The translations under genes were made by a program, and so were the position numbers. The notes under the pieces are model-generated. The model had not been told where the DNA came from, searched no databases, and was given only the letters and a program-made list of their open reading frames with translations. Shown piece by piece: positions 7,983 to 32,873 of a stretch of 64,000 bases of DNA (position 1 is its first letter; every line of letters begins with the position of its first letter). Location: the IMG/VR virus record IMGVR_UViG_3300036770_007547, positions 1 to 64,000 of that record; one strand, 5' to 3'.

Positions 7983-7998
7983 GTTAGTGCGCACTAAC
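7983..7998. promoter_or_regulatory. perfect 16-bp palindrome, putative protein-binding site
   Basis: GTTAGTGCGCACTAAC; related copies at 32382, 32402 and 32858. Confidence 0.7.
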
Positions 7999-8086
7999 TC
8001 AGTAGAAACCATGACATTATGTGCGTTCGCACATAAATACCCATGCGAACACCCCTCGCATTCATATCACTCACAAGGAGATTCTA

Positions 8087-8230
8087 ATGACTGCTGTACT
8101 CAAACGATTTTGTTGTTTTCTGGAAAGCATAGGACGAGCTCGAGCTGCCACGGCCCTGAGCAATGCAGGTCTGCACAAAGAGGCCCGGGAACTGATGTTG
8201 GAACCTTGCACATGTGGTTGTCAAAAATAA
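8087..8230 (+). CDS. 47-aa small protein
   Basis: AAGGAG RBS; CATAAATA upstream. Confidence 0.65.
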   Translation: MTAVLKRFCCFLESIGRARAATALSNAGLHKEARELMLEPCTCGCQK

Positions 8231-8361
8231 TCGGTTGGTTGGGCAACAATTATGCCCGTAGCCTAGACCAATATCTGGCCCAACATCAACCCAAGAATCT
8301 CTATGACATCGAGCGTCTCACACGCGAACATGATCGAAGACTGTGCAACGGATATAGGTAG
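8212..8361 (+). CDS. small DUF3563-like protein
   Basis: LDQYLAQHQPKNLYDIERLTREHDR resembles DUF3563 pattern from memory. Confidence 0.5.
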   Translation: MWLSKIIGWLGNNYARSLDQYLAQHQPKNLYDIERLTREHDRRLCNGYR

Positions 8362-8489
8362 CCACAGCATGCTCGGTCATCTTCCTGCGATTCGTTTTGC
8401 CGTTTCTGATGTGGTGCAAGAGTGGTATGCGCCCTGGGTCAAGCTCTACTATCAGCTCAGATACCAAGAACACTGGAGATGGTATTATC

Positions 8490-8963
8490 TCAATTGGGAA
8501 CAGAACCAGGAATTTTTGCCCTGACCGGAGTCAGCAACCATCCTTGGCCCTGGCATCGGTGCAACCATTGATAGAAACAAGGTGTGATCTCCAGTCTCCA
8601 ATCACCGTTCACACCCAAATAAGTGGTAGGACCAGGCTCTCCACCGTGCTCGTGTTCGTACACACTGAGATGTGAAAATTCAGACAACACATCTATGCCA
8701 TCCACTTCCACACGTCGCAACAGTATGGCGGTTTCTCGATCGCTGTGATAGATCTTGTGGCGCATGGAGATTTCTACAACAACCGGCTGATCGATGTGTA
8801 CCCGAGTGCTCAACTCCAAGGGTCCTTGGATCCAGTCGTCGTACAAAACGTCTCCGCTCACTGCCACTCGAGTCCAAGGTTCACCATTGTCGACCCGGAC
8901 ATCAAGTTCGATGTTTACAGGAAGCCAGATCTCAGTAGCCAGCAGTTGTGAGAAATTGTTCAT
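8490..8963 (-). CDS. hypothetical protein
   Basis: 157-aa beta-rich ORF downstream of radical SAM gene. Confidence 0.65.
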   Translation of the reverse strand: MNNFSQLLATEIWLPVNIELDVRVDNGEPWTRVAVSGDVLYDDWIQGPLELSTRVHIDQPVVVEISMRHKIYHSDRETAILLRRVEVDGIDVLSEFSHLSVYEHEHGGEPGPTTYLGVNGDWRLEITPCFYQWLHRCQGQGWLLTPVRAKIPGSVPN

Positions 8964-10209
8964 ATTCAGGCAAGTAATCTAGTATGCGGTTGCCACGACG
9001 TGACTCCAACAGCTTGATGTAATGCACTAGATCTCGAACGCGATGCGATTCGTCTGGTGCCGATTCGAGATATTTTATATAGCTCTGGCAATCCTGATGG
9101 ATCTGGGAGCGCACCCAGTCCGGATGTCGTGTGTTCAAGATCTGTGGCTGGGTCGAGGTTGATTCCACCAGGGTCGACAAACGATCTTGGGCCATCCGTC
9201 GTAGATCCTGTGGCAGTACACTGATTCGCATCATGGCCGGTTCGTTGAGGAAATCACAGCTTTCCACGGCGATGCTGTTGTCCAAGGCGTAGCGATAAAC
9301 AGTGTCAAGGTGCAGTATGGAAAACAACGTGGGCGTGATGCGTATCTGCATGAGCCAGCCATGTGATTGGCTGACCAGGCGCCACCGTTCCAACAATGCT
9401 CGGACATCATTGATGTGGCTGGGCCAACGCAGATAGTCGTTGAGATCATGCAGGCACTCGATGCTGACCCCCACATTGACTTGATGGAATCTCTCGAGCT
9501 GGGTTATCAAGTCGTCGTCCCAGACCGTGAGATTGGTGGTGAAACCAATGGTGACTTTGTGGGAGAGATCCGAGTCTATCAGCGCCTGCAAGATGCGTTG
9601 GAAGGCCGGAGTTATCATGGTCTCGCCGCCAATGAAATGCAGATATGCCAGGTTGGGAGTCTGCGACAGCATGTCAACAAATTGAGACAGCAAGGTGTCA
9701 TCGTCACACCAGGCCGGTGGCGGCATGCTGTTTATGATGCCCAATTGCAAATGTTCGCGGGCCAGTCGAGAACTGCTGTGCGGTGTGCAGAATACACAGG
9801 CCGAATTGCAGTAGTTGCCTAGATCTATTTGCCAGTCCTGCGGCAACAATTCGGTGTCGCCGTGATGGTCCATGCTGTGCTTGAACTCGTGTCGCCAGGG
9901 CGAACTCACCACAGTTTTGTCAAAGGGATCACGTATCCCAGTTTTCAAGAGTTGTTTCTGCCGACCACTGGGCTTGCCGTGTGACTCCATGATCCGGCAA
10001 GGTTGGCAACCCGAGACTTCGTTGCCTTCCAGCAGATCCAAGCGCAACGGCGACAATTTTTTCTGGAACCAAGTCACTGGGCTAACATCTTGTATGCGAT
10101 ACTGGCCCACTCTCTGTGTTTTGTCGCACCAACGGCAGTATTCGAAACTGCCGTTGTTGTTGATCCTGGCATGAAACCAGGGACTGCTACAAAAAGTCTT
10201 GTCAAGCAT
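8932..10209 (-). CDS. radical SAM protein with N-terminal Cys-rich (twitch/SPASM-like) region
   Basis: [15 protein letters not shown]; FCSSPW, YCRWC, CQPC. Confidence 0.9.
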
Positions 10210-10792
10210 CCCGATTCACAATGACCCGATCTGCCAGACCATAATCCACGCTCTGCTGGGCTGTCATGAAGTTGTCGCGTTCCATGTCGGACTTCAATTC
10301 ATCAAAACTCTTGCCAGTGTGACGGACATAGATCGTGGTCAGCACTTCTTTCCAACGCAACAGTTCTCTGGCTTGGATTTCCACGTCTGTGGCTTGCCCT
10401 GATGCGCCGCCAAGGGGTTGATGGATCATGTGGCGAGCATTGGGCAGGATCGATCGATGTCCTTTCTCACCGGCTGCAGCCAACAACGAACCCATGCTTG
10501 CGGCCTGTCCCATGACAATGGTATGCACCGGACAACGGATAAACTGCATGGTATCATAGATGCTCATACCTGCGGTGACGCTACCGCCTGGGCTGTTGAT
10601 GTAGAAATTGATGGAACGCGCCGGGTCCTCGCTCTCCAGGAACAGCATCTGTGCCACGATGAGACTGGCTGAATGGCTGGAGACTTCGGTGTCCAGCATG
10701 ATGATGCGATCTCGGAGGAGACGGCTGTAGATATCGTAACTTCGCTCGCCCTTGGATGTGTGTTCCAGGACGATGGGTACTAGATTGGGCAT
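10202..10792 (-). CDS. clpP: ATP-dependent Clp protease proteolytic subunit
   Basis: [26 protein letters not shown] (Ser), HQP (His), ERD (Asp). Confidence 0.97.
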
Positions 10793-10810
10793 GTTGTTTC
10801 CCTTAAAAGA

Positions 10811-11371
10811 TCAACTGATGTGGTCGCAGATGTTGTATTTCAATGCTTCTTCGGCCGAAAGATACACATCCTGGGCCGGCAACAAAATTTGTCGGATAAC
10901 ATCGTCCTCGAGGCCGGTGCATTTTTTATAGAGACTGATCATGCGCAGTTGCGTGAGTTCGAATTCTTTCACTGTGGCAAACAGCTCATGGGCCTTGCCC
11001 GAATTGTGCCACGAAAATTGGTGGCTGAGGATCGAAGTGTTTGGTGTCAACACCCGGCGGCCTGGGGAACCTGAAATGAATATGCAAAGACCGGCCGATG
11101 CGATCGATCCCAGACCCACGGTCTTGATAGGGATGGTACTGCTGTTCATGACATCGATCAAGGCAAATGCGTCTGACAAATTACCGCCATCGCTGTTGAT
11201 CATCAACAGCAATTCTTTCTTTTTGCGTTTCCTGACATGATTTTCGTGCAGGATCCACTCGATTATGGGCTTGATGTTGTCTTCGTCCACGACCCCCATC
11301 AACACCATGATACCATGGTCTTGCAGGGCTTCGCCTGGACTTTCGTATTGTAGATCTTTGTCGGTAGTCAT
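10811..11371 (-). CDS. second, divergent ClpP-family protease
   Basis: INSDGG, IASAG, SHQF, QDVYLSAEEALKY. Confidence 0.88.
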   Translation of the reverse strand: MTTDKDLQYESPGEALQDHGIMVLMGVVDEDNIKPIIEWILHENHVRKRKKKELLLMINSDGGNLSDAFALIDVMNSSTIPIKTVGLGSIASAGLCIFISGSPGRRVLTPNTSILSHQFSWHNSGKAHELFATVKEFELTQLRMISLYKKCTGLEDDVIRQILLPAQDVYLSAEEALKYNICDHIS

Positions 11372-11434
11372 AGCGTCCTTGAAAGAAATAGCGGGCGTCA
11401 CCATTGGGCAACGGCCCGCTATACTTAGCCTAGG

Positions 11435-12049
11435 CTACTGGGCGGTATCAGGTTTGTTTGGCTGGCTCACACCCTGATCTTGCATGCGATCCAGTTCGCG
11501 GAAAGCCTCCTGTGCCCGGCGCTCGGCTCGCACAGTCTCTTCTCGACGATCCCGTTCGCGTGCCAAGGGATTGGCATCGCCAGTGGGCAAGGCCACCAGA
11601 ACAAAGGTGCGGAATCTCGAACCCTCGGCGATCATCTTGCTCTCGACCACTTCTACCCCAGTGATGTCAACATTGGGGCAAAAACTCTTGATGGCCATTT
11701 CGCTGAACTCGCTGTCAGTGTTCTGAGCGCCTTCTCTACGGAACAATCGGCTGTGCTGATTGACTCGTCCACCAGCGGCCATACAGATCTTGCCAAATGC
11801 CACGGTCTTGGCTTTGTCAGTGCTCATGGCCATGTCGGAACTGGTAGAGGTACCATTGGCATAGATGGCCGAAGTGCTCTTGGGCAGTTTGGTCATCCAC
11901 TCCGGAGCCTTGTCGATGGCATTTTCTGCCAGGCGCTCTTGGTACTTGCGCTCTTGGTAGGCGCGGTTTTCAAAGTTGTCCTTGGGCGCACTAGAACATG
12001 CGGCCAAAACCGATGCAACCAAAGGTACTAGCAGTAGTTTCTTGTTCAT
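11435..12049 (-). CDS. lipoprotein (LPP20-like)
   Basis: Lipobox LAAC; PEW motif. Confidence 0.75.
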   Translation of the reverse strand: MNKKLLLVPLVASVLAACSSAPKDNFENRAYQERKYQERLAENAIDKAPEWMTKLPKSTSAIYANGTSTSSDMAMSTDKAKTVAFGKICMAAGGRVNQHSRLFRREGAQNTDSEFSEMAIKSFCPNVDITGVEVVESKMIAEGSRFRTFVLVALPTGDANPLARERDRREETVRAERRAQEAFRELDRMQDQGVSQPNKPDTAQ

Positions 12050-12058
12050 TTGCTTTCC

Positions 12059-12196
12059 TTATCTTCCTACACTACGGACATAATCACCTGCGGCTTTGAG
12101 ATCCTCGCCAGCACCACTCATGGCGCCCCCGAGAGTCCCACACGCGGTGACCGAAATGGCCATTGCCAGCGCCAAAACAGATCTCAACAGTTTCAT
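12059..12196 (-). CDS. entericidin EcnA/B-like small lipoprotein
   Basis: Lipobox VTAC then GTLGGAMSGAGEDLKAAG; upstream TTGACA-N18-TAAAAT. Confidence 0.7.
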   Translation of the reverse strand: MKLLRSVLALAMAISVTACGTLGGAMSGAGEDLKAAGDYVRSVGR

Positions 12197-12256
12197 GGGT
12201 GCCTCCTTGGCTAAGTTTACAAACAATTTTACAACAATCACGATTTACATGTCAAT

Positions 12257-12832
12257 CTAGAACTTGTCCACCACCACCCATTTCTGGGGGCGCACCTCAC
12301 AGATGATGCCCTGATGCTGTCGTATGTCATTTTGGTCAAAAGTGGGTTCCACGAACCATTTACACACAGTGCCGTTGTGCCAGAATCGGTTTGGATAATT
12401 GGGATGTGGGCGGAACTGAGCCACGTCGCCGATCTCGCCCGGTCTCGTGGTTTTGATTGTTTTCAGTTCGGGACGATCCTTGCACACCAGTATCTGTTCG
12501 GAGGCCACAGCCGCACCGCCCAGTCGAGTCTTGACATCGGTCTCGGCGCGATACACTGCTATGGTACAAGCATCATGCTCGGTGCGATTACCACCTTTCC
12601 AGCTGTATTCGCCCATGGCCGTGTACCATCGGCTGCCCACTCGTACCCGGAAATCCACCACGCACTTTTTGGCGCCTGAAGGCAGTACGACTATGTCGCG
12701 CCGCACAGGGCTACGCTCGCTGATCACTGCTCGATTCTGGGTCACAGTCTTGTTCTGCAACACACATTGTTCGTTTTCTTGCGCCAGGGCCAACATCGGC
12801 AGCGCCATCAGCATCAACACAGCGGGTTTCAT
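12257..12832 (-). CDS. secreted Cys-rich protein
   Basis: Signal peptide ending ALA; six Cys. Confidence 0.75.
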   Translation of the reverse strand: MKPAVLMLMALPMLALAQENEQCVLQNKTVTQNRAVISERSPVRRDIVVLPSGAKKCVVDFRVRVGSRWYTAMGEYSWKGGNRTEHDACTIAVYRAETDVKTRLGGAAVASEQILVCKDRPELKTIKTTRPGEIGDVAQFRPHPNYPNRFWHNGTVCKWFVEPTFDQNDIRQHQGIICEVRPQKWVVVDKF

Positions 12833-13161
12833 GGGCAGTTGTTCCTTATATCCAACATGAGTTGATTCACCAACCAGTCCACACGCCCGGATCCAATGTT
12901 GTGACGCTGATGATATGTGGCGGGTTCGGTGATGACTTTCCAGAACTGCAATTGATTGGCGACCCGGGACTGTAGTTCTTGATCAGGCGTGGTTCTCATG
13001 CTTTCTAAAAATGCCATCTGTTGATGTTTGATGCGGCAATCTATCACGAATCTCTCGAGATCGCCCACCCACATCTGGGCCTGTGCATCAACGCATGACA
13101 GGCTGGCAAGCATAACGAATGCTCCAGATACGAGCCTTGATCTGGCTTTGGAGTTGGGCAT
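12829..13161 (-). CDS. putative secreted protein (start uncertain)
   Basis: Hydrophobic stretch then AQA; ATGA coupling. Confidence 0.55.
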   Translation of the reverse strand: MPNSKARSRLVSGAFVMLASLSCVDAQAQMWVGDLERFVIDCRIKHQQMAFLESMRTTPDQELQSRVANQLQFWKVITEPATYHQRHNIGSGRVDWLVNQLMLDIRNNCP

Positions 13162-13348: not shown

Positions 13349-13354
13349 GCACAC

Positions 13355-13385: not shown

Positions 13386-13393
13386 AGTCCAGA

Positions 13394-13820: not shown

Positions 13821-14012
13821 TCACCAGTGTCGTATGGTGTTGGCGATGATGAATCCGCATGTGACCACATGCACCACCACCCAAAAGGTCTTGAGCGCTA
13901 GAGCGACTCGAGCCTCTCGTAATGTGAGTATGGGCACCCGAGGTCGGTCTTGATCGTTGGTGCCCATGAGATGCCCGGTGGCCCGGGCCCAGATGCGTTC
14001 GAAGCTGTTCAA
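13821..14012 (-). CDS. small membrane protein
   Basis: C-terminal TM helix; overlaps aceA stop. Confidence 0.65.
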
Positions 14013-15289
14013 TGGAACTGCTCCTCTTCGGTACTGCCCTTGAGAGCTTGTGTGCTGGCATTGGCTTCGATGGTGGTGGTCACGCGATCAAAATAACCGG
14101 TACCTACTTCCCTTTGATGCCGTACAGCTTCAAAACCACGACTCGCATCCGCGAACTCACGCTCTTGTAGCTCCACGAAAGCAGACATGCCGTTCCTAGC
14201 ATAACCATGAGCAAGATCAAACATGCCATGATTAAGAGCATGGAATCCAGCAAGTGTGATGAATTGAAAACGGTAACCCATTGCTCCAAGTTCACGTTGG
14301 AAACGACCAATTGTGTCTGCATCTAGGTTTTTCCTCCAGTTGAATGATGGTGAGCAGTTGTAGGCCAGCATCTTGTTGGGATAATGCCGGTGGATGCCTT
14401 CGGCGAACCTACGGGCAAAATCAAGATCTGGAGTTCCAGTCTCGCACCATATGAGATCGGCGTAGGGCGCATAGGCCAGGCCTCGGGCCAAGGCTTGATC
14501 AAAACCTTTGCGGGTGCGATAGAATCCTTCTACCGTCCTCTCGCCTGTAAGAAAATCTTGATCGCGTGGATCAATATCTGAGGTAACAAGATCAGCAGCC
14601 TCAGCGTCAGTTCTAGCAAGGAGAATGGTAGGCACACCCAAAACATCAGCCGCGAGTCTCGCAGCCGTGAGCTTATTGATGGCTTCTTGTGTTGGTACAA
14701 GGACTTTCCCTCCCATGTGTCCGCATTTCTTGACCGAGGCCAATTGGTCCTCGAAGTGTACTCCCGAAGCTCCGGCTCGGATCATGGCCTTCATGAGTTC
14801 AAAAGCATTGAGCACACCACCAAAGCCAGCTTCGGCGTCGGCCACGATGGGAGCGAAGAAATCGTGATCGTTTTTATCTTCCATCCATTGGATCTGATCC
14901 GCACGTTCGAATGTGTGATTGATGCGGCGCACCACTGCGGGCACTGAATCCGCTGGATACAGGCTTTGATCTGGATACATCTCCCCGGCCAAGTTGGCGT
15001 CCGCAGCCACTTGCCACCCACTCAGATAGATGGCTTGGAGCCCTGCTTTGACTTGTTGCAGGGCCTGCATGCCCGTCAATGCACCCAGAGTGTTGATGTA
15101 ATCGTTTTCATTGAGCAGTCGCCAGAGTTTCTTGGCACCATTCGTGGCTCGAGTATGCACTTCGGGTTCGGATCCGCGCAGTCGTATCACGTCTTCGGCG
15201 CTGTATTCTCGTCTCACGCCTTGCCATCTCGGATCGCTGGACCACTGCTGTTGTAATTCGTATATTTGTGCCTGTTTGGTGTGATGCAT
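14009..15289 (-). CDS. aceA: isocitrate lyase
   Basis: [11 protein letters not shown] signature; [36 protein letters not shown]. Confidence 0.98.
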
Positions 15290-15708: not shown

Positions 15709-15979
15709 TCAGGCCCACTGAATCGATGCCGGCCAACAGCATGTAGTTGGCCAGCATCCCAAAACTTTGCCGGGTCCAAGCGGCCCAGGCATAGATCGCA
15801 CAACCCAAAATAAAGAACGGATATATCAATATCAGCGGAGGGTTGGGCACGGTGGCCGCCATCCACAAACTGCAACCGATACTCAAGGCCCAGGCCAATG
15901 CTTCTAGCACGAATCTCAATGGATAACTGCGGAAGTCTTGTTTGATCCATGCAAACGTGGGTCGCAACAAATCTATCAC
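15689..15979 (-). CDS. small multi-TM membrane protein
   Basis: Three hydrophobic helices; GTGA coupling to uvsE. Confidence 0.7.
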   Translation of the reverse strand: MIDLLRPTFAWIKQDFRSYPLRFVLEALAWALSIGCSLWMAATVPNPPLILIYPFFILGCAIYAWAAWTRQSFGMLANYMLLAGIDSVGLTRMIFS

Positions 15980-17001
15980 AACACATACTCCCGAGCAAAC
16001 GAATGGCTGGCTAGGTTCTTGCCTTTGCTTTCGCACATGATGTCAAACTCTGTGGAAAAAGTGGCTGCCCACTCATTGACTGCACGATTCCAGTAGAAAT
16101 CGCTGTGTGCTCGAAGTTTGCCTTTCTTGTAGCCCCGGGCCAACAGATCAGTCAAGTCCGGAGCAACATCTACATCGTGCCCGACCAGTATGTCCTCACG
16201 GCTGACACTGTAATGTATGACCGGGCGACGCAGACCACGCCAACTGTCACGAACTTTTTTGACACGGTCATCCTGGGCACTGATGTATTCCCCGGTCTTG
16301 ATCCAGTGGTGATGTATGTCTAACACCAGAGCGAGATGGTCTGCCAGTTCGAGGCTGGCGTCGAGTCCCCAGGACATTTCGTCGTTTTCGATGGTGATAC
16401 AATTTCGCGCCTCTGGTGAGAGACGCCCAAGTGTGTGGATGATACCGGCTGGACCTTTTCGACCCGAGATGTGGACGTTGATTTTAAAGTCCTGGAAGGT
16501 ACGTCCATAACCCATCCAGCGGGCCATATCTGCATGATATTCAAACTCCTCTATGCTTCTATTTACGATGTCTTCGCTTTCGCTGGCCAGAACACAGAAC
16601 TGTCCGGGATGGAAGCTGAGCCTTACACCCAAGCGACGAGCAGCTTCGCCGATGGGCGCAAATATACGCTCGCAATGGTCCTGGATCTCCCGGCGCTGCC
16701 ACCACTCGCGCCAGCTGGGCTCGGTGTAGCCCTGCAACATCTCTGAACCCAGGCGTACCATCCGCAGTTCCGGCTCCAGAGCGCCCACGGTCTCGACCAT
16801 GCGCAAGGCCGCAGCGGCATTGTGGTTCATGATGTCCCACTGGCGTTGTTCGGCTTCCTCGGGGTGCTCGCGCAGCCAGCGCATGGTGGTTGATCTACCA
16901 TTGAGTTCACGGTTGGAGGCATTCACTTTCATGCCCCCGCATTCCGAGGGATCAGTGAGCCATTTGCATGCGAAACCGATGCGAGAGTGTGTAGTAGTCA
17001 T
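15976..17001 (-). CDS. uvsE: UV damage endonuclease
   Basis: RIGFAC, RLSFHPGQF, TIENDE, VLDIHHH, RAHSD, MCESKGKNLA. Confidence 0.95.
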   Translation of the reverse strand: MTTTHSRIGFACKWLTDPSECGGMKVNASNRELNGRSTTMRWLREHPEEAEQRQWDIMNHNAAAALRMVETVGALEPELRMVRLGSEMLQGYTEPSWREWWQRREIQDHCERIFAPIGEAARRLGVRLSFHPGQFCVLASESEDIVNRSIEEFEYHADMARWMGYGRTFQDFKINVHISGRKGPAGIIHTLGRLSPEARNCITIENDEMSWGLDASLELADHLALVLDIHHHWIKTGEYISAQDDRVKKVRDSWRGLRRPVIHYSVSREDILVGHDVDVAPDLTDLLARGYKKGKLRAHSDFYWNRAVNEWAATFSTEFDIMCESKGKNLASHSFAREYVL

Positions 17002-19945: not shown

Positions 19946-20475
19946 ACATTCTCCCGTGATATCACACCGGTGATCTGGAGGGTATAACGATGTGTGCGCC
20001 CCAGGTTGGCTGCGAGATGCGGTGTGCTTCCGTGCCAGTACACCCCATCTCCGGCCTGCCAACCAGTGATGGGAGTGCCGTCTATTTCAAAATAATGACC
20101 GCTCTGCCAGGGTTCCATGAACAACACATATCTCCGTATGGTGTTTGTGTCTGACACATCATAGATGTTGCGAAACTTGCTGTAGGTGTCGCTGTGTTCG
20201 GGCAGAACATCTCCAGATCTCATGCGATACAGAGACCAGCTCCAGTGTCGCATGGGTATCTGTTCCCGTATCTGTTGCATCCAGCTTGGTTCACTGCGGC
20301 GCATGTCGTAGAGATCTCCAGTGAACCGGGTCTGGGTGAACCCCAGCCCCCGCCATTCGAGTGTGTCACTGGGGTTGTTGAATTCTTCGTGATCATACTC
20401 AAGCTCGCGATGGCTCAGTGCCCAGACCGGATCTAGATAGATCCTACCAAACTCAGCTTGCTCGGGTATTACCAT
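19942..20475 (-). CDS. 2OG-Fe(II) oxygenase-like protein
   Basis: PEHSD, PHLAAN, RYTLQITG. Confidence 0.75.
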   Translation of the reverse strand: MVIPEQAEFGRIYLDPVWALSHRELEYDHEEFNNPSDTLEWRGLGFTQTRFTGDLYDMRRSEPSWMQQIREQIPMRHWSWSLYRMRSGDVLPEHSDTYSKFRNIYDVSDTNTIRRYVLFMEPWQSGHYFEIDGTPITGWQAGDGVYWHGSTPHLAANLGRTHRYTLQITGVISRENV

Positions 20476-21694
20476 AATGGATCACTGTCATGCCCGGCAT
20501 GTCGGGCATCTGGCGCCAGGGATCAACGATCACCGAGCCTGGCAAAAATTCAAAGTAGTTGCGATCTTCGCCTTGCTCGCCGGTATAACCATATGTGATG
20601 TTGCGATTGTGCGCCATCAGGATCACTGCGGGTTTGGTAAATGTGGACATCACGCCAGTGTCATCGTCGGCCAAGGGATCTACATAGAACACCCCACGCC
20701 CGTGACGCTCTACATAATGTCCCACCAAAGTGGAATATGATCCGATGCAATAGGGAACATCGGGCTTGTAGGCCTTGCCATGTATCACGATGGGCAGATT
20801 GCCGTTTTCTTCGCTGGTGCGCACCAAGAAGTTGGCAAGATTCTGGGCTTGTATCTCTCGGGCATGCATGATGGTGTCAAACATGTCATAACCGAGATCG
20901 TATTCTTTGGCCAGCCAGCGCAGAGCGATGTTGTCCCGGGGATGGCATGCACCAGCATCACCCATGCCTGCGGTCATGTACTTGGGTCCCATGATACGCA
21001 TGGTGCTCTGGGCCAAGGCGTCTGTGACAACATCTACATTGATGTTGCCGATCCTCATGGCAAAGTCCTGGATCATGTTGACGATGCCCACCTTGGCCGA
21101 AATGAATGTGTTGTAGAAGATCTTGATGGCTTCGCACTCGTCCCAGGTTCCTGTCACGTATCTAGGATCGTTTTGCATGAGCGGCTGATAGATGTCGATG
21201 AGTTCCTGCATTTCGGCAGGGTCACCGCTTTCGCTGCCGATCATCACCATCTCAGGGTTGACCATGTCCCACTTCACTGATCCCATGGCGATGAGATAGG
21301 GATTGTACAGGAACTGATGCTTTTTGTTCAACAACGATGCAAAATGCCGGCGTGTGGTGCCAGGTAGCACCGTGGAAATCAACACCACTCGCTTGGGCGA
21401 GTCTGCGTATTGATTCACTGCCACCAGACTGTCTTTCACGGCCTGATGGCCAAAATCTCTTGGTTCCATGTGGCTACTGGGCACACTGCCATCATAGCCT
21501 TGTTCGTGTGGAGTGGGCACAGCGATGAAGATCCAATCACTTTCTCTCACAGTTTCTTCGATGCTACAAACCTTGACCGATTCGCTGCTGCGTGGGTAAA
21601 TATCGTACCCGCGCACAGTATACTGTTCTGCGAACACTTCGGCGCAATCCAGGCCAAGTTTACCAAGACCGATAAATCCAATATTTTTAGACAT
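20453..21694 (-). CDS. UDP-glucose/GDP-mannose 6-dehydrogenase family
   Basis: GLGKLG, IAVPTP, STVLPGT, KIFYN, GACHPRD, AYKPD. Confidence 0.93.
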   Translation of the reverse strand: MSKNIGFIGLGKLGLDCAEVFAEQYTVRGYDIYPRSSESVKVCSIEETVRESDWIFIAVPTPHEQGYDGSVPSSHMEPRDFGHQAVKDSLVAVNQYADSPKRVVLISTVLPGTTRRHFASLLNKKHQFLYNPYLIAMGSVKWDMVNPEMVMIGSESGDPAEMQELIDIYQPLMQNDPRYVTGTWDECEAIKIFYNTFISAKVGIVNMIQDFAMRIGNINVDVVTDALAQSTMRIMGPKYMTAGMGDAGACHPRDNIALRWLAKEYDLGYDMFDTIMHAREIQAQNLANFLVRTSEENGNLPIVIHGKAYKPDVPYCIGSYSTLVGHYVERHGRGVFYVDPLADDDTGVMSTFTKPAVILMAHNRNITYGYTGEQGEDRNYFEFLPGSVIVDPWRQMPDMPGMTVIHYGNTRAS

Positions 21695-28327: not shown

Positions 28328-28331
28328 AAGA

Positions 28332-28613
28332 TTATTTATCGCTTCTTGGGTGGTTATCACTGCTTACAATAACCGCTAGCTTGGTGGCCACCCAAGTGGC
28401 CCAGCGCTCATCGGGCACGTCGAACCATACCGGTATCACCCCATGATTGTGAACGAGTTTGCGGCGCACTCGGGGCTGTGTGTGCCACTGGCTGCCGAAC
28501 CAATCCCGGCACTCGCGCATCACAGCATACCACTGTTCGATGGTATGTACCCACACATAGAATCGGTGCAGATCCGGGGTCGTTTTTTTAAGTGAGCTAG
28601 ATTCCATCGACAT
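28332..28613 (-). CDS. Trp-rich hypothetical protein
   Basis: ORF directly downstream of the structured RNA; start uncertain. Confidence 0.65.
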   Translation of the reverse strand: MSMESSSLKKTTPDLHRFYVWVHTIEQWYAVMRECRDWFGSQWHTQPRVRRKLVHNHGVIPVWFDVPDERWATWVATKLAVIVSSDNHPRSDK

Positions 28614-28635
28614 GACAATCAGAGATCTCTGTAAC

Positions 28636-28850
28636 AAGCACCATAAGGCTTTTCACCGTGGGCCACTCATTGGCTTACCCCCCAAGGAGTGGTGCTTTCC
28701 AGGCACATCACTTGAGTTTTGTACCTACCTCGATCGGGCCCTTGGTAGGTACTGAGCGGTGTCACACCCGCGATAGGAATTAAGTGGCTGAGCCATGGAC
28801 CAAGGCGCCTTTGTCCGCCAACCCCTATCTATCGTGCCCCATCACTGCCA
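28636..28850 (-). ncRNA. candidate multi-stem structured RNA, family unknown
   Basis: No long ORF; seven or more helices; G-U pairs work only on minus strand; TTGATC-N17-TAACAT promoter at 28855-28883. Confidence 0.7.
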
Positions 28851-28982
28851 GTAGATGTTACTAGATATCTCGTGATTGATCAAGACGGTCTGGCCAAACG
28901 ATCAGGTAGATATTTCTTTGATTGGATCTGTTTCCACATGCGTTTCAATCGCCATACCAAATAATGCAACCACTCGCGACGG

Positions 28983-29120
28983 TCAATCATTGTGTTCTCC
29001 TTTTTCAGATATGATTCCAAGGAATGCCATCATCAATCCCAGTCCCAACCACACCGGGTCCCGGTCCAGGAATGACACTATACAAAACATCAGAGATGAT
29101 GTATACAAAAGTCCGCTCAT
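28983..29120 (-). CDS. small two-TM protein
   Basis: Start trimmed to MSGLLY; ATGA coupling. Confidence 0.5.
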   Translation of the reverse strand: MSGLLYTSSLMFCIVSFLDRDPVWLGLGLMMAFLGIISEKGEHND

Positions 29121-29797
29121 GTGTTTGGAACTCCCAGATGTTTTTTTACCAATTGCGATATCACACCATGTCCCTGGATGCTGGGATGCCAGTTGTCTTG
29201 ATCGGTCACGAGATTGTTGGATCGGCAATACTCCATCATGCCGCCGTGACCTTCGAGGTCCACTCTCCGGTGTGCTCGTGTGTTCATGAAGTCCTGGAAC
29301 CAGGGCGACAGATTACGGGCAGTGTGCTCCAACATGTACATGAAATGATAATCAAATCCACGAAGTTCTAGATAGCTGATCATTCCCATCAAAGCCAGTT
29401 CATTGGTCCACTCTGCGGGCGGTATGCCCATGCGTTTGAGATGTTTGACTGGCCTGCATCCGTGTGTGCGCCAGTTCACCCCCAACACCGAAGACCAAGG
29501 AAAATTGGCACTGCCAGTGACGTCGTCGGCCTCGCACATCACATCCACTCGAGCCATGTCACTGATGTTGAACAATACCCGGGTATGTTCGGGACGAAAA
29601 TGTGGTTGCCGTTGCAGAAACATCATGACATTGTTGGCAACGGCGAAATTGCCACCGCCTGACAGGCCCAAATTGGCGTACATGTCAATGCCATCCAGCA
29701 AAAAATGCGACCAAACCTGGGGATCACGTCGAGCGGTATCTAGATCACTGCTACCAGCAGTGAAACTGCAACCAGCCACCAACAATGTGTTTATCAA
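29117..29797 (-). CDS. SGNH/GDSL-like protein
   Basis: AGCSFT, NLGLSGGGN, DNWHP. Confidence 0.7.
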   Translation of the reverse strand: MINTLLVAGCSFTAGSSDLDTARRDPQVWSHFLLDGIDMYANLGLSGGGNFAVANNVMMFLQRQPHFRPEHTRVLFNISDMARVDVMCEADDVTGSANFPWSSVLGVNWRTHGCRPVKHLKRMGIPPAEWTNELALMGMISYLELRGFDYHFMYMLEHTARNLSPWFQDFMNTRAHRRVDLEGHGGMMEYCRSNNLVTDQDNWHPSIQGHGVISQLVKKHLGVPNT

Positions 29798-31176
29798 ACC
29801 TTTTCACCTGATTCGAAACCGCGGAATCTCACGAATCTCGGGAATCGGAGGCTGTAACTTCCGTCTTGGTTTTGTGTGATGGCATCAGCTTCGACTTCAA
29901 CCACATGACCAAGAAGCGCCAATCGATCCAGCCAATACTGATCACGATCACTGTCACTGAAGCCACTGCCAACATTGACCCGGATGTCACGTCCATTGTC
30001 TTTCCCTTCGCAAATCATGGCGCCGAGGCGGCCGGCATTGCGACCGGTACCTTCCTCGAAACCCGTGATGTTGAGATCCACTGTGATGGTGGGCTTCCAT
30101 TTCATCCAAAAGCTGGTGCGTTTGCACTCGTAGGGAGCGTCCACGGCCTTGATCATGATGCCTTCGAATCCCTCTTTCACAGCATCCTCGGCGAATCTGC
30201 GCATGATGTCATGTCCCTCGGCTGTGTCGAGATCCACTTCCAGGCCCGGCATGATGCGCAGGCAATCGGTCTGTTCTTCGAGACGCTCACGAGCCTGGTC
30301 CAGGATGGCCAGTCGTTTGTGTTGCTGTGCGTTCCAATATCCGCGCTCGAAGTCGTCCAAGGGAATGATGTCAAAGATATGATAGATCATGCCATCTGTT
30401 CGAGCATCGCTCTTGCGATGTGCCTGGCGCATGAGCTTTTGGAAACTCTCGCCCACCACTTCTCCGTCTAACACGAATCGGCCATTTGAATTCAAGCCAT
30501 GCCGGAACAATGATCTTGCGTTTTCGATGGCTTCTGCGATCTGCGGAAAGTTTTCAAACGCCTTGCCGTTGCGACTGTACAATGTGGCAGAATTGCCATT
30601 GACAACTGCCAGCACACGAACGCCATCCAATTTGCACTCCAGACGCTTGCGGCCTTTCAGCTTGCGGGGTTGATCTGTGCTGTCCTGTGCCAGCTGGCAA
30701 GTGAACACTGGGATGGCCCACTCGGTGTTCTTGCACACCTTGTTGATGGTTTTTTCGCTGACGCCGCAACGGAGATCCTTGATCAACACTCGGCGAGCCA
30801 AGCCGTTCCACTCATCGCTGTCAAACTCCTGCATGATTTCCTCGATGGCTGCTCGAGCGTTGCCGCCTGTGACACTTCGTGTGCGCAGGCTTTCACACAA
30901 GGCCCAGAATCGCACCCAAGGATTGGGTCGGCCTTCAAGGCCCGAGCTTTCGGGCACCTTCTTGACGTTGTAAGCGAAGTAGGGATTGTAGGCCAGATAC
31001 GCACAGTACAAAAAACACTGGGCATTGGCCGATCCCAGTTTGGCGGCCATGACAGCCTTTTCGATCACACTTTCTTTGTGCAACCGGCTGTCTGAACTTT
31101 CGAGATCTCTAATCCAGTCACATGCCACTTTTAAGCCATTGAACTCCGTGGACGACCAGGGTCTTGATGTTTTCAT
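29794..31176 (-). CDS. ATP-dependent DNA ligase
   Basis: KLDGVR, LDGE, IFD, EGIMIK, WMKWK, VGSGF, LRFPRF; GGAG RBS before MKTS. Confidence 0.96.
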   Translation of the reverse strand: MKTSRPWSSTEFNGLKVACDWIRDLESSDSRLHKESVIEKAVMAAKLGSANAQCFLYCAYLAYNPYFAYNVKKVPESSGLEGRPNPWVRFWALCESLRTRSVTGGNARAAIEEIMQEFDSDEWNGLARRVLIKDLRCGVSEKTINKVCKNTEWAIPVFTCQLAQDSTDQPRKLKGRKRLECKLDGVRVLAVVNGNSATLYSRNGKAFENFPQIAEAIENARSLFRHGLNSNGRFVLDGEVVGESFQKLMRQAHRKSDARTDGMIYHIFDIIPLDDFERGYWNAQQHKRLAILDQARERLEEQTDCLRIMPGLEVDLDTAEGHDIMRRFAEDAVKEGFEGIMIKAVDAPYECKRTSFWMKWKPTITVDLNITGFEEGTGRNAGRLGAMICEGKDNGRDIRVNVGSGFSDSDRDQYWLDRLALLGHVVEVEADAITQNQDGSYSLRFPRFVRFRGFESGEKV

Positions 31177-31266
31177 AGAGATTCTCCAATTCAAAAAATG
31201 CATTGTCGGGGTCTTGCCATAACAGCATCAAGAACGCGCCCAAAGCCAAGTACACGAGTATTCGTA

Positions 31267-31701
31267 TCATGATCCGGTCACCAAATGCAGTTCGTTGCCG
31301 TTCCGTAACTCAAACGCTTCGATAAAGATGTGATGATCATCGCCGCTGTTGCGGATGGCCCAGTCAGCGGCACGATACACATCGCCCCAAGTAAAGCCGA
31401 AAACTGGCACACGCTCACCTTGATAGACCACTGTCGCATCACCAGGATAGGGATGGTCTTTGAGGAATCCATGCTCGGGTAGTTCGTACATGCTCCAGAT
31501 GGATTCGAGCTTGTGATCGGCCTTGAATCGACCATAGTAGTCCATCTTGCGATCAAAGTCTTGCTCTTCTTGCTGATAAGCACCAGCCAGTGCCTCGCGG
31601 ATGATCTCGACGGTCTTTTGGATCCCATCGGCGTGGGCAAAGCAAAGAGCGTTATGGATCCGGGTGAACTCTTCTGCGGTAAGGGTAACTGCGGTATTCA
31701 T
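31267..31701 (-). CDS. hypothetical early phage protein
   Basis: AGGAG RBS after cassette promoter; SGDDHHIFIE motif. Confidence 0.8.
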   Translation of the reverse strand: MNTAVTLTAEEFTRIHNALCFAHADGIQKTVEIIREALAGAYQQEEQDFDRKMDYYGRFKADHKLESIWSMYELPEHGFLKDHPYPGDATVVYQGERVPVFGFTWGDVYRAADWAIRNSGDDHHIFIEAFELRNGNELHLVTGS

Positions 31702-31730
31702 GTCTGGCTCCTAATTTCTAACTATGCTAT

Positions 31731-31762
31731 ATTATAGCCGAAATCACCATTATTGGTCAACC
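31731..31762 (-). promoter_or_regulatory. early promoter cassette, copy 6
   Basis: GGTTGACC-N18-TATAAT. Confidence 0.85.
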
Positions 31763-31911
31763 GGGGTTTCCAGGTCTTGTAGCCGCAAATATTCGGCGTT
31801 GAGTTCCGCGATACGCTGTTCGGTGCGGGCATTGCCTTCAAGGTCCAGCTCGCCACGGATTTCCGAAAGGTAGATCAGTTGTTCGACCACTTCGTTGAGA
31901 GTGTTAGACAC
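31750..31911 (-). CDS. 53-aa coiled-coil protein
   Basis: AAGGAG RBS, GTG start; stop inside promoter cassette. Confidence 0.6.
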   Translation of the reverse strand: MSNTLNEVVEQLIYLSEIRGELDLEGNARTEQRIAELNAEYLRLQDLETPVDQ

Positions 31912-32302
31912 GGATGTTGTCTCCTTTTTCAATGAATTGAACTGCTTCGTCGATGCACATCTTGGCTCGCACGATGTCGTCGTACCCCATGAGCTCTTGG
32001 GCGTCACTGAGGATCGAGAAGGCCTGACCAGCAGGATCAAAAAAGAAGCCACGCTCGTCGCCGCGGTAGAACCGCTGGATGGTGATCTTCACACGGTTCA
32101 GGGTCTGGCGTGCATCTTCCACTTCGCCCCAGTTCAGTTCGCGCCAGGCCGACATCATCATGCGAGTGATGATTTGCACAGCCGAGTCGCCTTCACGGAC
32201 GTAACTGGCAACGGCTTCTTCTACTTGCTCACGGGTGGCACCAAACATGCGGAGTTCGCGCAATTCTTGCTGGTCGAGTTCTTGGTAGATTGCTGTAGTC
32301 AT
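31904..32302 (-). CDS. hypothetical early phage protein
   Basis: AAGGAG RBS after cassette promoter. Confidence 0.8.
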   Translation of the reverse strand: MTTAIYQELDQQELRELRMFGATREQVEEAVASYVREGDSAVQIITRMMMSAWRELNWGEVEDARQTLNRVKITIQRFYRGDERGFFFDPAGQAFSILSDAQELMGYDDIVRAKMCIDEAVQFIEKGDNIRV

Positions 32303-32334
32303 CGTCTGCTCCTTGTTGTTTACTGTATGTCTAT

Positions 32335-32365
32335 ATTATATGAAATTGGTAATTTCTGGTCAACC
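32335..32365 (-). promoter_or_regulatory. early promoter cassette, copy 7
   Basis: GGTTGACC-N17-TATAAT. Confidence 0.85.
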
Positions 32366-32381
32366 TGAGAAAACCCAGCTG

Positions 32382-32417
32382 GTAAGTGCCCGCTAACTTA
32401 GGTCAGTGAGCACTTAC
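32382..32417. promoter_or_regulatory. tandem pair of 16-bp quasi-palindromes, 20-bp period
   Basis: GTAAGTGCCCGCTAAC and GTCAGTGAGCACTTAC. Confidence 0.65.
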
Positions 32418-32578
32418 CAACTCTGGACCAAGTGATTCGTTGGCGCATCCAGTGGCACCATGAAGGAGTGGGTGAGCAGTTCAAAATCTTGGATATCGGG
32501 CTGCTCGGGACCATCGGTCTTGACCCTCAACATCACTCACGCTGTAAAAATGAATCCCGATATCGCAGTGTTGAAACA

Positions 32579-32610
32579 AGTATACCAGAAATGGCCTTTA
32601 TTGGTCAACC
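32579..32610 (-). promoter_or_regulatory. early promoter cassette, copy 8
   Basis: GGTTGACC-N18-TATACT. Confidence 0.75.
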
Positions 32611-32617
32611 GCCCTTG

Positions 32618-32788
32618 TCATTGGGGTTCGGGACCAACGCCACAGGCGTAAAAGAAGAGATCCTGATCAAAGCGGCTGTTGGCTTCTTTGCAGGCTGACG
32701 CCACAGCGATGGCCGCTTGGAGACGGGCATGGGGGTCAAGGATCGAGTCGATGTATTTGGCGAGCAGTTCAAAGTGTTTCTTAGACAT
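32618..32788 (-). CDS. 56-aa early protein
   Basis: Manual ORF MSKKHFELLA...NSRFDQDLFFYACG; AGGAG RBS. Confidence 0.75.
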   Translation of the reverse strand: MSKKHFELLAKYIDSILDPHARLQAAIAVASACKEANSRFDQDLFFYACGVGPEPQ

Positions 32789-32821
32789 GCTGTGGCTCCT
32801 GGTTGTTTACTGTATGCCTAC

Positions 32822-32852
32822 ATTGTATGAAAATGGGATTTATTGGTCAACC
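32822..32852 (-). promoter_or_regulatory. early promoter cassette, copy 9
   Basis: GGTTGACC-N17-TACAAT. Confidence 0.85.
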
Positions 32853-32857
32853 ACCAG

Positions 32858-32873
32858 GTTGGTGGGCACTGAC
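32858..32873. promoter_or_regulatory. 16-bp quasi-palindrome
   Basis: GTTGGTGGGCACTGAC, at the same offset from the -35 box as the 7983 copy. Confidence 0.6.

What the first reader, a model, noticed from the sequence alone, without database searches (positions are those of the whole stretch)
7983..32873. Four SlmA-site-like palindromes at the heads of early gene arrays
Seen: GTTAGTGCGCACTAAC (7983), GTAAGTGCCCGCTAAC (32382), GTCAGTGAGCACTTAC (32402) and GTTGGTGGGCACTGAC (32858). All are intergenic and just upstream of cassette -35 boxes; two sit exactly 5 bp from GGTTGACC. Established: the nucleoid-occlusion factor SlmA (TetR family) binds GTGAGTACTCAC-like sites, and DNA-bound SlmA blocks FtsZ assembly. 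GTGAGCACTTAC (32406-17) matches 10/12. Inference: replicating phage DNA could recruit host SlmA to stop cell division using DNA alone, or use it as a transcription modulator. A phage-encoded TetR/HTH operator is the alternative.
Basis: partly seen in the sequence, partly recalled or inferred. Interest (0 to 1): 0.75.

Follow-up and report, generated by a model that had tools for sequence, protein, structure and literature searches.

The report
SlmA-box-like sites on phage promoter cassettes
Four 16-bp palindromes sitting just upstream of early promoters in this uncultured jumbo phage are real, conserved protein-binding sites whose sequence grammar matches the binding boxes of the bacterial cell-division blocker SlmA, and the same boxes turn up in many unrelated phages that carry no gene for such a protein, so phages may be borrowing a host factor through DNA alone.

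Summary
They lie on the upstream side of minus-strand sigma70-type promoter cassettes. They are the only good matches in the 222,775-bp record apart from one.

They are double-stranded-DNA protein sites, not hairpins or terminators. Folding energies are weak. None of 20 deviations from consensus is compensated. Site orientation can flip. A terminator can lie on either side of a site.

Across 30 distinct sites in the clade the invariant core is GTNAG-N6-CTNAC. This matches the published SlmA half-site rule (G, T, A, G essential; position 3 free; position 6 a pyrimidine), but with 16-bp rather than 12- or 20-bp geometry.

The identical 16-mer also occurs in arrays in unrelated phages, mixed with strict 12-bp SlmA boxes and 20-bp composites. 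The E. coli-type 20-bp box gives at least 120 stretches in IMG/VR, against 4 for a reversed control.

No TetR-domain hit over the cut-off turned up in 51 site-bearing virus records. A host SlmA-type protein is therefore my favoured binder (about 0.4). The host is unknown and no binding was tested. A phage-encoded regulator or terminase small subunit remains a live rival.

The cassettes themselves resemble the PeSL cassettes of T4-like phages.

The parts
7983..7998 (.). Site 1, a perfect 16-bp palindrome GTTAGTGCGCACTAAC. It ends 5 bp upstream of the GGTTGACC of the minus-strand promoter. Its centre is at about -50.5. It lies in a divergent intergenic region.
   Evidence: a site is kept upstream of the orthologous gene (47% identical) in G001, at 234568, and the homologous divergent junction of G001 carries the identical 16-mer at 101733
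32382..32397 (.). Site 2. It reads GTTAGCGGGCACTTAC in promoter orientation. It ends 16 bp upstream of the GGTTGACC of the promoter at 32335-32365. Its centre is at about -61.5.
   Evidence: the homologous site in L018 has the opposite orientation
32402..32417 (.). Site 3. It lies 20 bp centre-to-centre from site 2, with its centre at about -81.5. It contains GTGAGCACTTAC, a full match to the degenerate 12-bp SlmA rule.
32858..32873 (.). Site 4. It reads GTCAGTGCCCACCAAC in promoter orientation and has one pentamer mismatch. It starts directly after the stop codon of the 738-aa gene and ends 5 bp upstream of GGTTGACC.
   Evidence: positionally conserved in G001 (66713) and, in degenerate form, in G002 (100445)
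7947..7977 (-). Sigma70-type early promoter cassette: GGTTGACC, 17 bp, TATAAT. It drives the 91-aa gene at 7641-7916.
32335..32365 (-). Sigma70-type early promoter cassette driving the 132-aa gene at 31904-32302.
32822..32852 (-). Sigma70-type early promoter cassette driving the conserved 56-aa gene at 32618-32788.
32874..35090 (-). 738-aa gene with a CBM_5_12 domain, preceded by a PAAR gene. It is the upstream neighbour whose stop codon abuts site 4. It marks the boundary between a long gene block and the early cassette array.
3140..3403 (-). Winged-helix protein of 87 aa (Pfam HTH_39). It is the only DNA-binding domain found among the 30 window proteins scanned against Pfam. I considered it as the binder and found it a poor candidate.

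Best explanation
The four palindromes are two-fold symmetric binding sites on double-stranded DNA for a dimeric helix-turn-helix protein. The core is GTNAG-N6-CTNAC.

They form the promoter-distal edge of mobile early-promoter cassettes: site, optional T-tract or terminator, GGTTGACC-N17-TATAAT, Shine-Dalgarno sequence, ATG. These cassettes resemble the PeSL cassettes of T4-like phages and are shuffled between relatives.

The site grammar is that of SlmA boxes in a 'one-dimer' 16-bp form. The most likely binder is therefore a host SlmA-type TetR-family protein that the phage recruits with DNA alone.

The consequence I favour is that, as phage genomes multiply, dispersed box-bound protein blocks Z-ring assembly, as multicopy SlmA-site plasmids do in E. 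coli. A local effect on the adjacent promoter is a second possibility.

Shown here: the sites, their conservation, their non-hairpin nature, the grammar match, and the absence of any TetR-domain hit over the cut-off. Inferred: the identity of the binder, the one-dimer geometry and any effect on division.
For: **A protein site, not a hairpin.**
- RNA folding energies are 0 to -5.7 kcal/mol, with z-scores no lower than -2.5 and mostly between -1.7 and +0.8. A genuine terminator in the same window gives -15.4.
- Of 20 deviations from consensus in 30 sites, none is compensated. Positions 3/14 and 8/9 are free.
- Orientation flips between homologous sites.
- A terminator can lie before or after the site.

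**Conservation.**
- G001 has 8 perfect sites, all promoter-linked.
- The positions of sites 4 and 1 are kept even though the downstream gene at site 1 is only 47% identical.
- One or two promoter-linked sites persist in the distant genomes G002 and G004.

**SlmA grammar.**
- G1, A4, G5, C12, A15 and C16 are invariant. T2 and T13 are present in 29 of 30 sites. Position 6 is a pyrimidine in all 30. This matches the mutational profile in PMC3020112.
- Arrays in unrelated phages mix the identical 16-mer with strict 12-mers (GTAAGTACTCAC, GTGAGTACTTAC) and 20-mers such as GTAAGTAAGTACTCACTCAC.
- L171 carries GTAAGTGAGCGCTTAC, which is 15 of 16 identical to the first 16 bases of the E. coli consensus site (PMC4423959).
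- The E. coli-type 20-bp box gives at least 120 IMG/VR stretches against 4 for the reversed control. These fall into 37 sequence clusters with GC from 36 to 66%.

**A host rather than a phage binder.**
- No TetR_N hit over the cut-off in G000-G005 and G006-G010.
- None over the cut-off in 40 further site-bearing records, 14 of them at least 90% complete.
- The complete 68-kb phage G006 shares only a sugar dehydratase and tail-fibre repeats with the jumbo phages.

**Precedent.** Tandem SlmA sites on a multicopy plasmid plus SlmA give a lethal division block (PMC3573117).
Against: - The host is unknown, so the presence of slmA is unverified.
- The clues to the host point to freshwater Burkholderiales-like bacteria. 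The phage isocitrate lyase scores best against PDB 3i4e (734 bits) and lower against E. coli 1igw (643 bits). The terminase relatives of one array group infect Ralstonia or an unnamed 'Gammaproteobacteria' host. The papers I read describe SlmA in E. coli and other Gammaproteobacteria.
- The 16-bp geometry has not been shown to bind SlmA. That one dimer spans pentamers 11 bp apart is my inference from the 20-bp consensus and from the published dimer-of-dimers description.
- Canonical 12-bp and 20-bp spacings are not enriched in the jumbo genomes.
- The sites are few: 4 in 222 kb. They are strictly promoter-linked, with spacings of 5, 16, 35-37 and 48 bp that keep one helical face. This suggests a role in transcription.
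- In E. coli, SlmA sites placed upstream of a promoter did not perturb it (PMC3573117).
- In Phage DSL-LC05 the equivalent array uses a different palindrome, and its terminase small subunit has a different N-terminus. This favours a phage-encoded binder, at least for the arrays.
- Other clades of the jumbo group carry other palindromes at the same place.
Confidence: 0.4

Rival explanations
1. The sites are operators of a phage-encoded regulator that is not a TetR protein and was not recognised here. It would tune or time a subset of early promoters by touching or blocking the RNA polymerase alpha subunit from about -50, -61 or -82. The likeness to SlmA boxes would be convergence.
For: - The linkage to promoters is strict and the spacing is helically phased.
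- Only a subset of cassettes carries a site.
- Other clades have different palindromes at the same position, as expected if a regulator and its operator co-evolve.
- G000 is only 64% complete, so the gene could lie in the missing part.
- G001 has a 51-aa helix-turn-helix gene directly behind one site-bearing promoter.
Against: - The promoters are near consensus and should need no activator.
- A site at -61 or beyond cannot occlude the polymerase.
- No shared DNA-binding protein links the jumbo clade with the unrelated phages that carry the identical 16-mer.
- The single winged-helix protein has the same recognition helix in G000 and G004, although their site repertoires differ. It is also less similar between G000 and G001 (60%) than between G000 and G004 (76%).
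- No HTH_3, HTH_17 or TetR_N hits were found.
Confidence: 0.3
2. The palindromes are only the stem-loop part of PeSL-type cassettes. They would serve as homology or structure for recombination that shuffles early genes, or as weak terminators, with no dedicated binding protein.
For: - The cassette architecture matches the PeSL description: a stem-loop, a near-perfect sigma70 promoter, a Shine-Dalgarno sequence and a start codon, with a clade-specific stem-loop sequence (PMC4122927, PMC2839356).
- The modules between cassettes differ between G000 and G001. The 144-aa gene has moved and the 132-aa gene is absent.
- Sites often abut the upstream stop codon.
Against: - The hairpins are very weak and the mismatches are uncompensated.
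- Separate canonical terminators sit beside many sites.
- The conserved feature is a base-specific pentamer pair rather than the ability to pair.
- The identical box occurs in arrays in unrelated phages that have no such cassettes.
Confidence: 0.15
3. The boxes are recognition sites of a terminase small subunit (pac or cosB type), as their position upstream of terS suggests in other phages. The jumbo-phage copies would be unrelated look-alikes or relics.
For: - In 38 of 120 loci with the 20-bp box, a conserved 149-aa TerS-like gene starts 113-382 bp from the boxes in all but three.
- Arrays often lie at contig ends.
- In Phage DSL-LC05 a different TerS N-terminus goes with a different array palindrome.
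Against: - The jumbo genomes have no homologue of that TerS.
- Their sites are single and promoter-linked in early regions, not at a packaging locus.
- The same boxes occur next to an unrelated 109-aa gene family in 15 loci, and next to neither family in 67 loci.
Confidence: 0.1

Closest known systems
SlmA-binding sites (SBS) of Escherichia coli and Vibrio cholerae. The 12-bp form is GTGAGTACTCAC and the 20-bp consensus is GTAAGTGAGCGCTCACTTAC.
   Same: - The half-site is identical: G, T, A and G fixed at positions 1, 2, 4 and 5, position 3 free, position 6 a pyrimidine.
- Site 3 contains a full match to GTRAGYRCTYAC.
- In other phages the same 16-mer sits in arrays with strict 12-bp and 20-bp boxes.
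- No cognate TetR gene is present on the phage, as expected for a host factor.
   Different: - The window sites place the two pentamers 16 bp end to end. Characterised sites use 12 or 20 bp, and this geometry has not been tested with SlmA.
- The sites are few, strictly promoter-proximal and on a phage.
- The host and its slmA status are unknown.
PeSL (promoter-early stem-loop) cassettes of T4-like phages
   Same: - The composite element has a short inverted repeat, a near-consensus sigma70 promoter, a Shine-Dalgarno sequence and a start codon.
- It is repeated before small early ORFs.
- The repeat sequence is clade-specific.
- Gene modules between cassettes differ between close relatives.
   Different: - Here the inverted repeat is a weak hairpin with base-specific, uncompensated conservation.
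- It coexists with separate canonical terminators.
- It keeps a helical register with the -35 box.
- The phage is an uncultured jumbo phage of about 345 kb with no close cultured relative, not a demonstrated T4-like phage.
KorB operators (OB) of IncP plasmids, and the dispersed SopB centromere repeats of phage N15. These comparisons come from memory and were not tested.
   Same: Short palindromes for one DNA-binding protein are scattered at variable distances upstream of many promoters of a mobile genome.
   Different: - No ParB-family protein was sought or found here.
- The sequence and spacing differ.
- This is a lead only.

Membership tests
SlmA-binding site (SBS) | Half-site G-T-(R)-A-G-(Y), with G1, T2, A4 and G5 required | tested here: met
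   In 30 clade sites G1, A4 and G5 are invariant, T2 is present in 29 of 30, position 6 is T or C in all 30, and position 3 is free. The rule is taken from PMC3020112.
SlmA-binding site (SBS) | Half-sites arranged as a 12-bp palindrome, or as the 20-bp composite of four pentamers | tested here: not met
   The window sites are 16-bp (GTNAG-N6-CTNAC). Only site 3 embeds a 12-mer. The 12-bp and 20-bp spacings are not enriched in G000 or G001. Both forms do occur beside the same 16-mer in other phages.
SlmA-binding site (SBS) | Bound by SlmA | not testable with these tools
   The complex-prediction job with E. coli SlmA and the site was not folded and gives no evidence.
SlmA-binding site (SBS) | The host encodes slmA | not testable with these tools
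   The host is unknown. The DNA comes from subsurface and lagoon metagenomes. The only bacterial-bin hit is a Haliscomenobacter MAG carrying 70%-identical relatives. Relatives cannot be drawn for a virus record.
TetR operator with a cognate phage-encoded TetR repressor | A TetR-family gene in the same genome | tested here: not met
   No TetR_N hit over the cut-off in 51 virus records. The weak sub-threshold hits are one in G003 and one in G040.
PeSL cassette | Sigma70-like early promoter with Shine-Dalgarno sequence and start codon, repeated before small ORFs | tested here: met
   Eleven cassettes in the window share GGTTGACC-N17-TATAAT and, in most, an AAGGAGC-type Shine-Dalgarno sequence and an ATG.
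PeSL cassette | A stem-loop acting as terminator immediately upstream of the promoter | tested here: inconclusive
   An inverted repeat is present but is weak (0 to -5.7 kcal/mol) and has no U-tract. True terminators are separate elements.
PeSL cassette | Association with indels and gene replacement between close relatives | tested here: met
   G000 and G001 differ by whole modules between cassettes upstream of the ligase gene.
Intrinsic (Rho-independent) terminator | A stable G+C-rich hairpin followed by a U-tract | tested here: not met
   Three of the four 16-mers do not fold in the mRNA sense, and none is followed by a U-tract. A real terminator in the same window folds at -15.4 kcal/mol.
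Terminase small-subunit (pac/cosB) site array | Clustered repeats next to terS, with a cognate TerS encoded nearby | tested here: not met
   This holds for other phages. The jumbo genomes have no homologue of that TerS, and their sites are single and lie in early regions.

The most novel reading that the evidence does not exclude
Many unrelated environmental phages, this jumbo phage among them, carry SlmA boxes. The 20-bp-box loci alone form at least 37 sequence clusters, with GC from 36 to 66%. The boxes sit singly beside early promoters or in arrays near the packaging genes. No TetR gene accompanies them. The phages would use them to capture the host's DNA-activated FtsZ antagonist, so that phage DNA itself stops host cell division or is positioned in the cell.
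Probability: 0.3. Interest if true: 0.85.

Novelty: new variant of a known kind. Interest (0 to 1): 0.68.

Why it matters
Phages are known to stop host cell division with proteins, such as Kil of lambda and Gp0.4 of T7 (from memory). Doing it with a few DNA boxes that switch on the host's own nucleoid-occlusion factor would be a new and very cheap takeover strategy.

The idea is directly testable, because multicopy SlmA-site plasmids already give the expected phenotype in E. coli.

Whoever the binder is, the work has two further results. It defines a widespread, strongly over-represented 12/16/20-bp box family in uncultured phages. It also extends PeSL-like promoter cassettes to a jumbo-phage clade.

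Tried and rejected
- **Hairpin, terminator or RNA element.** Rejected on weak folding energies, the absence of compensatory change, flipped orientation and the variable order relative to terminators. Rfam found nothing at 7300-8700.
- **Phage-encoded TetR.** None found.
- **Window winged-helix protein (HTH_39, 3140-3403) as the binder.** It is single-copy in G000-G004. Its recognition helix does not track the site repertoire, and it is absent from the array phages.
- **A 51-aa helix-turn-helix gene behind a site-bearing promoter in G001.** It has no orthologue in G000.
- **HTH_3 and HTH_17.** No hits.
- **Genes shared by G000 and G001 but absent from G002 and G004.** There are 12 and none is DNA-binding. 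They include isocitrate lyase, a PstS-like protein, a staphylococcal-nuclease homologue and methyltransferase and aminotransferase genes.
- **Structure prediction of E. coli SlmA with site 1.** Not folded, so it gives no evidence.
- **Host identification.** Every route gave no firm host:
  - no close phage in INPHARED;
  - a Haliscomenobacter MAG bin, which is implausible given the sigma70 and Shine-Dalgarno usage;
  - sequencing runs that give only the environment;
  - the protein atlas and cluster members, which carry no taxonomy;
  - the best metagenomic hits to the isocitrate lyase, of which the two I traced lie on phage relatives.
- **G006 as an N4-like phage with hairpin promoters.** Rejected: its 3008-aa ORF is a collagen-like tail fibre.
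- **Array sequences against cultured phages.** No match.
- **The 2011 PNAS paper listing the E. coli SlmA sites.** Not held.

Full report
**What the window is.** The window is the first 64 kb of an IMG/VR virus record of 222,775 bp, estimated to be 64% complete. It belongs to a large clade of uncultured jumbo phages of about 345 kb. There is no close cultured relative. The DNA is held in subsurface and lagoon metagenomes.

**Check of the observation.**
- The repeated cassette reads on the minus strand: GGTTGACC, 17 bp, TATAAT, a leader ending in AAGGAGC, then ATG. The palindromes therefore lie upstream of the -35 box.
- Sites 7983 and 32858 end 5 bp from GGTTGACC, site 32382 ends 16 bp away and site 32402 ends 36 bp away.
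- Eleven such cassettes lie in the window, and three carry a site.
- Only five places in the whole record match GTNAGTGNNCACTNAC with at most one mismatch. Four of them are these sites.
- The pattern was derived from the sites themselves, so the fair test is out of sample. The nearest relative G001 (315,778 bp; ligase 78% identical) has eight perfect matches where about 0.02 are expected. All eight lie upstream of cassette promoters.

**A DNA site for a protein, not a hairpin.**
- Folded as RNA in the mRNA sense, three of the four 16-mers do not fold at all.
- With flanks, the energies stay between -0.8 and -8.1 kcal/mol, and the palindrome's own stem contributes at most -5.7. The z-scores are unremarkable. 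A true terminator in the same window reaches -15.4 kcal/mol.
- I collected 30 distinct promoter-linked sites from G000, G001 and 80 related loci. Among 20 deviations from consensus, none is compensated by a Watson-Crick change. Positions 3/14 and the central pair 8/9 are unconstrained.
- Homologous sites can have opposite orientation: 32382 compared with L018.
- Where a canonical terminator accompanies the site, it lies between site and promoter in some relatives (L006, L017, L024, L031). In others it lies upstream of the site (L005, L018, L063). The site is therefore tied to the promoter on the DNA, not to the 3' end of the upstream transcript.

**Spacing.**
- The distance from the end of the site to GGTTGACC falls into classes of 4-5, 15-17, 35-37 and 48 bp.
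- With the -35 hexamer at -35 to -30, this puts site centres near -50.5, -61.5, -81.5 and -93.5, roughly on one helical face.
- The number of independent classes is small. The terminator is a module of about 31 bp, and an 11-bp indel separates the 5-bp and 16-bp classes. I therefore treat the phasing as suggestive only.

**Conservation.**
- The site after the 738-aa gene and before the conserved 56-aa gene is kept in G001. It survives in degenerate form, with both pentamers intact and 5-bp spacing, in the distant genome G002.
- The gene downstream of site 1 has an orthologue in G001 (47% identical) that also has a site upstream, at 234568.
- The homologous divergent junction of G001 carries the identical 16-mer at 101733.
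- Distant clades with 40% GC have only one or two such sites. At the same position they show other palindromes: GTAGTACT..AGTACTAC and GTGTTGY-N5-7-RCAACAC.

**The cassettes.**
- The architecture matches the PeSL cassettes described in T4-like phages (PMC2839356, PMC4122927).
- As there, the gene modules between cassettes differ between close relatives. G000 has extra units between the 56-aa gene and the ligase gene. The homologue of its 144-aa gene sits elsewhere in G001.

**Grammar of the site.**
- In the 30 sites G1, A4, G5, C12, A15 and C16 are invariant. T2 and T13 occur in 29 of 30. Position 6 is T (26) or C (4). Position 3 is free.
- This is the profile found by mutating the SlmA site: a strong preference for G, T, A and G at positions 1, 2, 4 and 5, a tolerant position 3, and any pyrimidine at position 6 (PMC3020112).
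- The difference is geometry. The characterised sites are the 12-bp GTGAGTACTCAC and the 20-bp consensus GTAAGTGAGCGCTCACTTAC (PMC4423959). The window sites span 16 bp.
- The 20-bp consensus can be read as four GTNAG pentamers at positions 1, 5, 12 and 16. SlmA is reported to bind as a dimer of dimers (10.1101/141812). From these two facts I infer that each dimer spans two pentamers whose centres are 11 bp apart, which is exactly the 16-bp arrangement. This step is inference, not a result.
- In the jumbo genomes only the 6-bp spacer is enriched, and only in G001 (10 found against 4.8 expected). G000 has 3. The 12-bp and 20-bp arrangements are at chance level.

**Evidence from elsewhere.**
- The exact 16-mer of site 1 occurs in 32 IMG/VR stretches. 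Its reversed control occurs in none.
- About half of these stretches are the jumbo cassette context. The rest belong to unrelated smaller phages. One is the complete 68,107-bp G006, whose portal is 50% identical to those of Caulobacter phages RW, KcrB, RLK and GB2A.
- In those phages the box occurs in non-coding arrays of 3-6 copies.
- The arrays mix three forms: the 16-mer, strict 12-bp boxes (GTAAGTACTCAC, GTGAGTACTTAC, GTGAGCGCTTAC) and 20-bp composites such as GTAAGTAAGTACTCACTCAC. One member, GTAAGTGAGCGCTTAC, is 15 of 16 identical to the first 16 bases of the E. coli consensus.
The reversed control gave 4.
- Of these 120 loci, 88 have the box in intergenic DNA. Many carry two or three copies. 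They form 37 sequence clusters with GC from 36 to 66%.

**Who binds?**
- No TetR_N domain over the cut-off was found in 51 virus records. These are G000-G005, G006-G010 and 40 more site-bearing records. Of the 40, 14 are at least 90% complete and range from 35 to 337 kb.
- G006 shares only a sugar dehydratase and tail-fibre repeats with the jumbo phages.
- The jumbo winged-helix protein is absent from the array phages and does not track the site repertoire.
- One box family shared by several unrelated phage lineages, with no shared DNA-binding gene, is most simply explained by a host factor. The only characterised protein with this grammar is SlmA.
- Against this, the host is unknown.
- The available clues point to freshwater Burkholderiales-like bacteria rather than enterics. 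The phage isocitrate lyase scores best against PDB 3i4e, which from memory is the Burkholderia pseudomallei enzyme. The terminase relatives of one array group infect Ralstonia or an unnamed 'Gammaproteobacteria' host. I could not check whether such hosts have an SlmA orthologue.
- In 38 of the 120 loci a conserved 149-aa TerS-like gene follows the boxes, within 113-382 bp in all but three.
- In the cultured relative Phage DSL-LC05 the same region carries eight copies of a different repeat (core TGACCCACTGG, in its fullest form the palindrome CTGACCCACTGGGTCAG). Its terminase small subunit has a different N-terminus. For the arrays, a terminase-recognition reading is therefore a serious rival.
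- That reading does not extend to the jumbo phages, which lack this TerS. Nor does it cover the 15 loci with an unrelated 109-aa neighbour or the 67 loci with neither.

**Function.**
- If a SlmA-type protein binds, two consequences are possible.
This is what a multicopy plasmid with tandem SlmA sites does in E. coli (PMC3573117).
- The second is a local effect on the adjacent promoter. Two facts argue against it. The promoters are near consensus. In E. coli, sites placed upstream of a promoter did not change its output (PMC3573117). In V. cholerae, however, SlmA does activate one promoter from a distance (10.1101/141812).
- I favour the first consequence with low confidence. I regard the promoter adjacency as partly a result of the site travelling as part of the cassette.

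**Verdict.**
- The SlmA-like reading is partly supported. The grammar match is real and independently reinforced. The geometry differs, and binder, host and effect are untested.
- The feature is best filed as a new variant combining two known kinds: PeSL-like promoter cassettes and SlmA-type boxes.

Noticed in passing
IMG/VR loci L164, L166, L169-L173, L175, L176, L180, L182, L184, L186-L189, L191; for example L172:290-440, L176:2050-2215, L184:4820-4970: Unrelated smaller phages carry arrays of 3-6 GTNAG-based palindromes (12-, 16- and 20-bp forms). The arrays lie in the non-coding region ahead of their packaging or early genes, often at contig ends. In one group they alternate at a 40-bp period with a second palindrome.
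   Followed up: partly
L172:260-405 (G006:270-403); L176:2075-2210: The second palindrome in those arrays is TGCACCAnnnTGGTGC. From memory this matches the NtrC enhancer consensus TGCACCA-N3-TGGTGCA. Its meaning was not examined.
   Followed up: no
L197-L316 (120 loci): The E. coli-type 20-bp box GTNAGTGAGNNCTCACTNAC is strongly over-represented in IMG/VR: at least 120 stretches against 4 for the reversed control. In 38 loci a conserved 149-aa TerS-like gene and a 512-aa large terminase follow. A G-rich block and an A/T run lie between the boxes and terS.
   Followed up: partly
L317:1350-1740 (Phage DSL-LC05, OR003940.1): A cultured relative has eight copies of a different repeat (core TGACCCACTGG, fullest form CTGACCCACTGGGTCAG) at the equivalent place, and a terminase small subunit with a different N-terminus. 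Part of this stretch is annotated as a CDS.
   Followed up: partly
window 14009-15289 (-): A phage-borne isocitrate lyase of 426 aa. It is 84% identical in G001 and absent from G002 and G004. It scores best against PDB entry 3i4e (734 bits), ahead of E. coli 1igw (643 bits). It is an auxiliary metabolic gene and a possible clue to the host.
   Followed up: partly
window 32398-32610 (-): The cassette promoter at 32580-32610 (-10 box TATACT) is followed by about 200 nt with no strong ORF. There is only a hypothetical 38-aa frame that ends inside site 3. This could be a small RNA or a micro-protein unit, and it is absent from G001.
   Followed up: no
window 8017-8036 and 8087-8230 (+): A second, unrelated palindrome TTATGTGCGTTCGCACATAA lies between site 1 and a divergent 47-aa ORF with a strong Shine-Dalgarno sequence. 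The ORF is clade-specific: G001 has an orthologue and G002 and G004 do not. The palindrome is unique in the genome.
   Followed up: partly
G002 (for example 52735, 52782, 53297, 65994, 131907, 283585); loci L040-L068: Distant clades of the jumbo group, with 40% GC, carry other palindromes upstream of their cassettes. GTGTTGY-N5-7-RCAACAC occurs 15 times in G002. AGTAGTACT-N-AGTACTACT occurs in L040, L055 and L068.
   Followed up: partly
window 60443-60480 (-): A canonical intrinsic terminator (AAAACCCTGC...GCAGGGTTTTT, -15.4 kcal/mol) abuts the -35 box of the cassette at 60442. Cassettes therefore come with either a terminator or a protein box at this position.
   Followed up: yes
window 32874-35443 (-); 8932-10209 (-); 15976-17001 (-); 20453-21694 (-); 4165-4644 (-): Other gene content: a PAAR-motif protein followed by a 738-aa CBM_5_12 protein, a radical SAM enzyme, a UvdE-like endonuclease, a UDP-glucose dehydrogenase and a SWIM zinc-finger protein.
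   Followed up: no
L157 (NCBI GCA_902725365.1, contig of 331,260 bp); L160: Near-complete relatives of this jumbo clade are deposited in NCBI as metagenome-assembled virus genomes with the same gene order around the isocitrate lyase.
   Followed up: no
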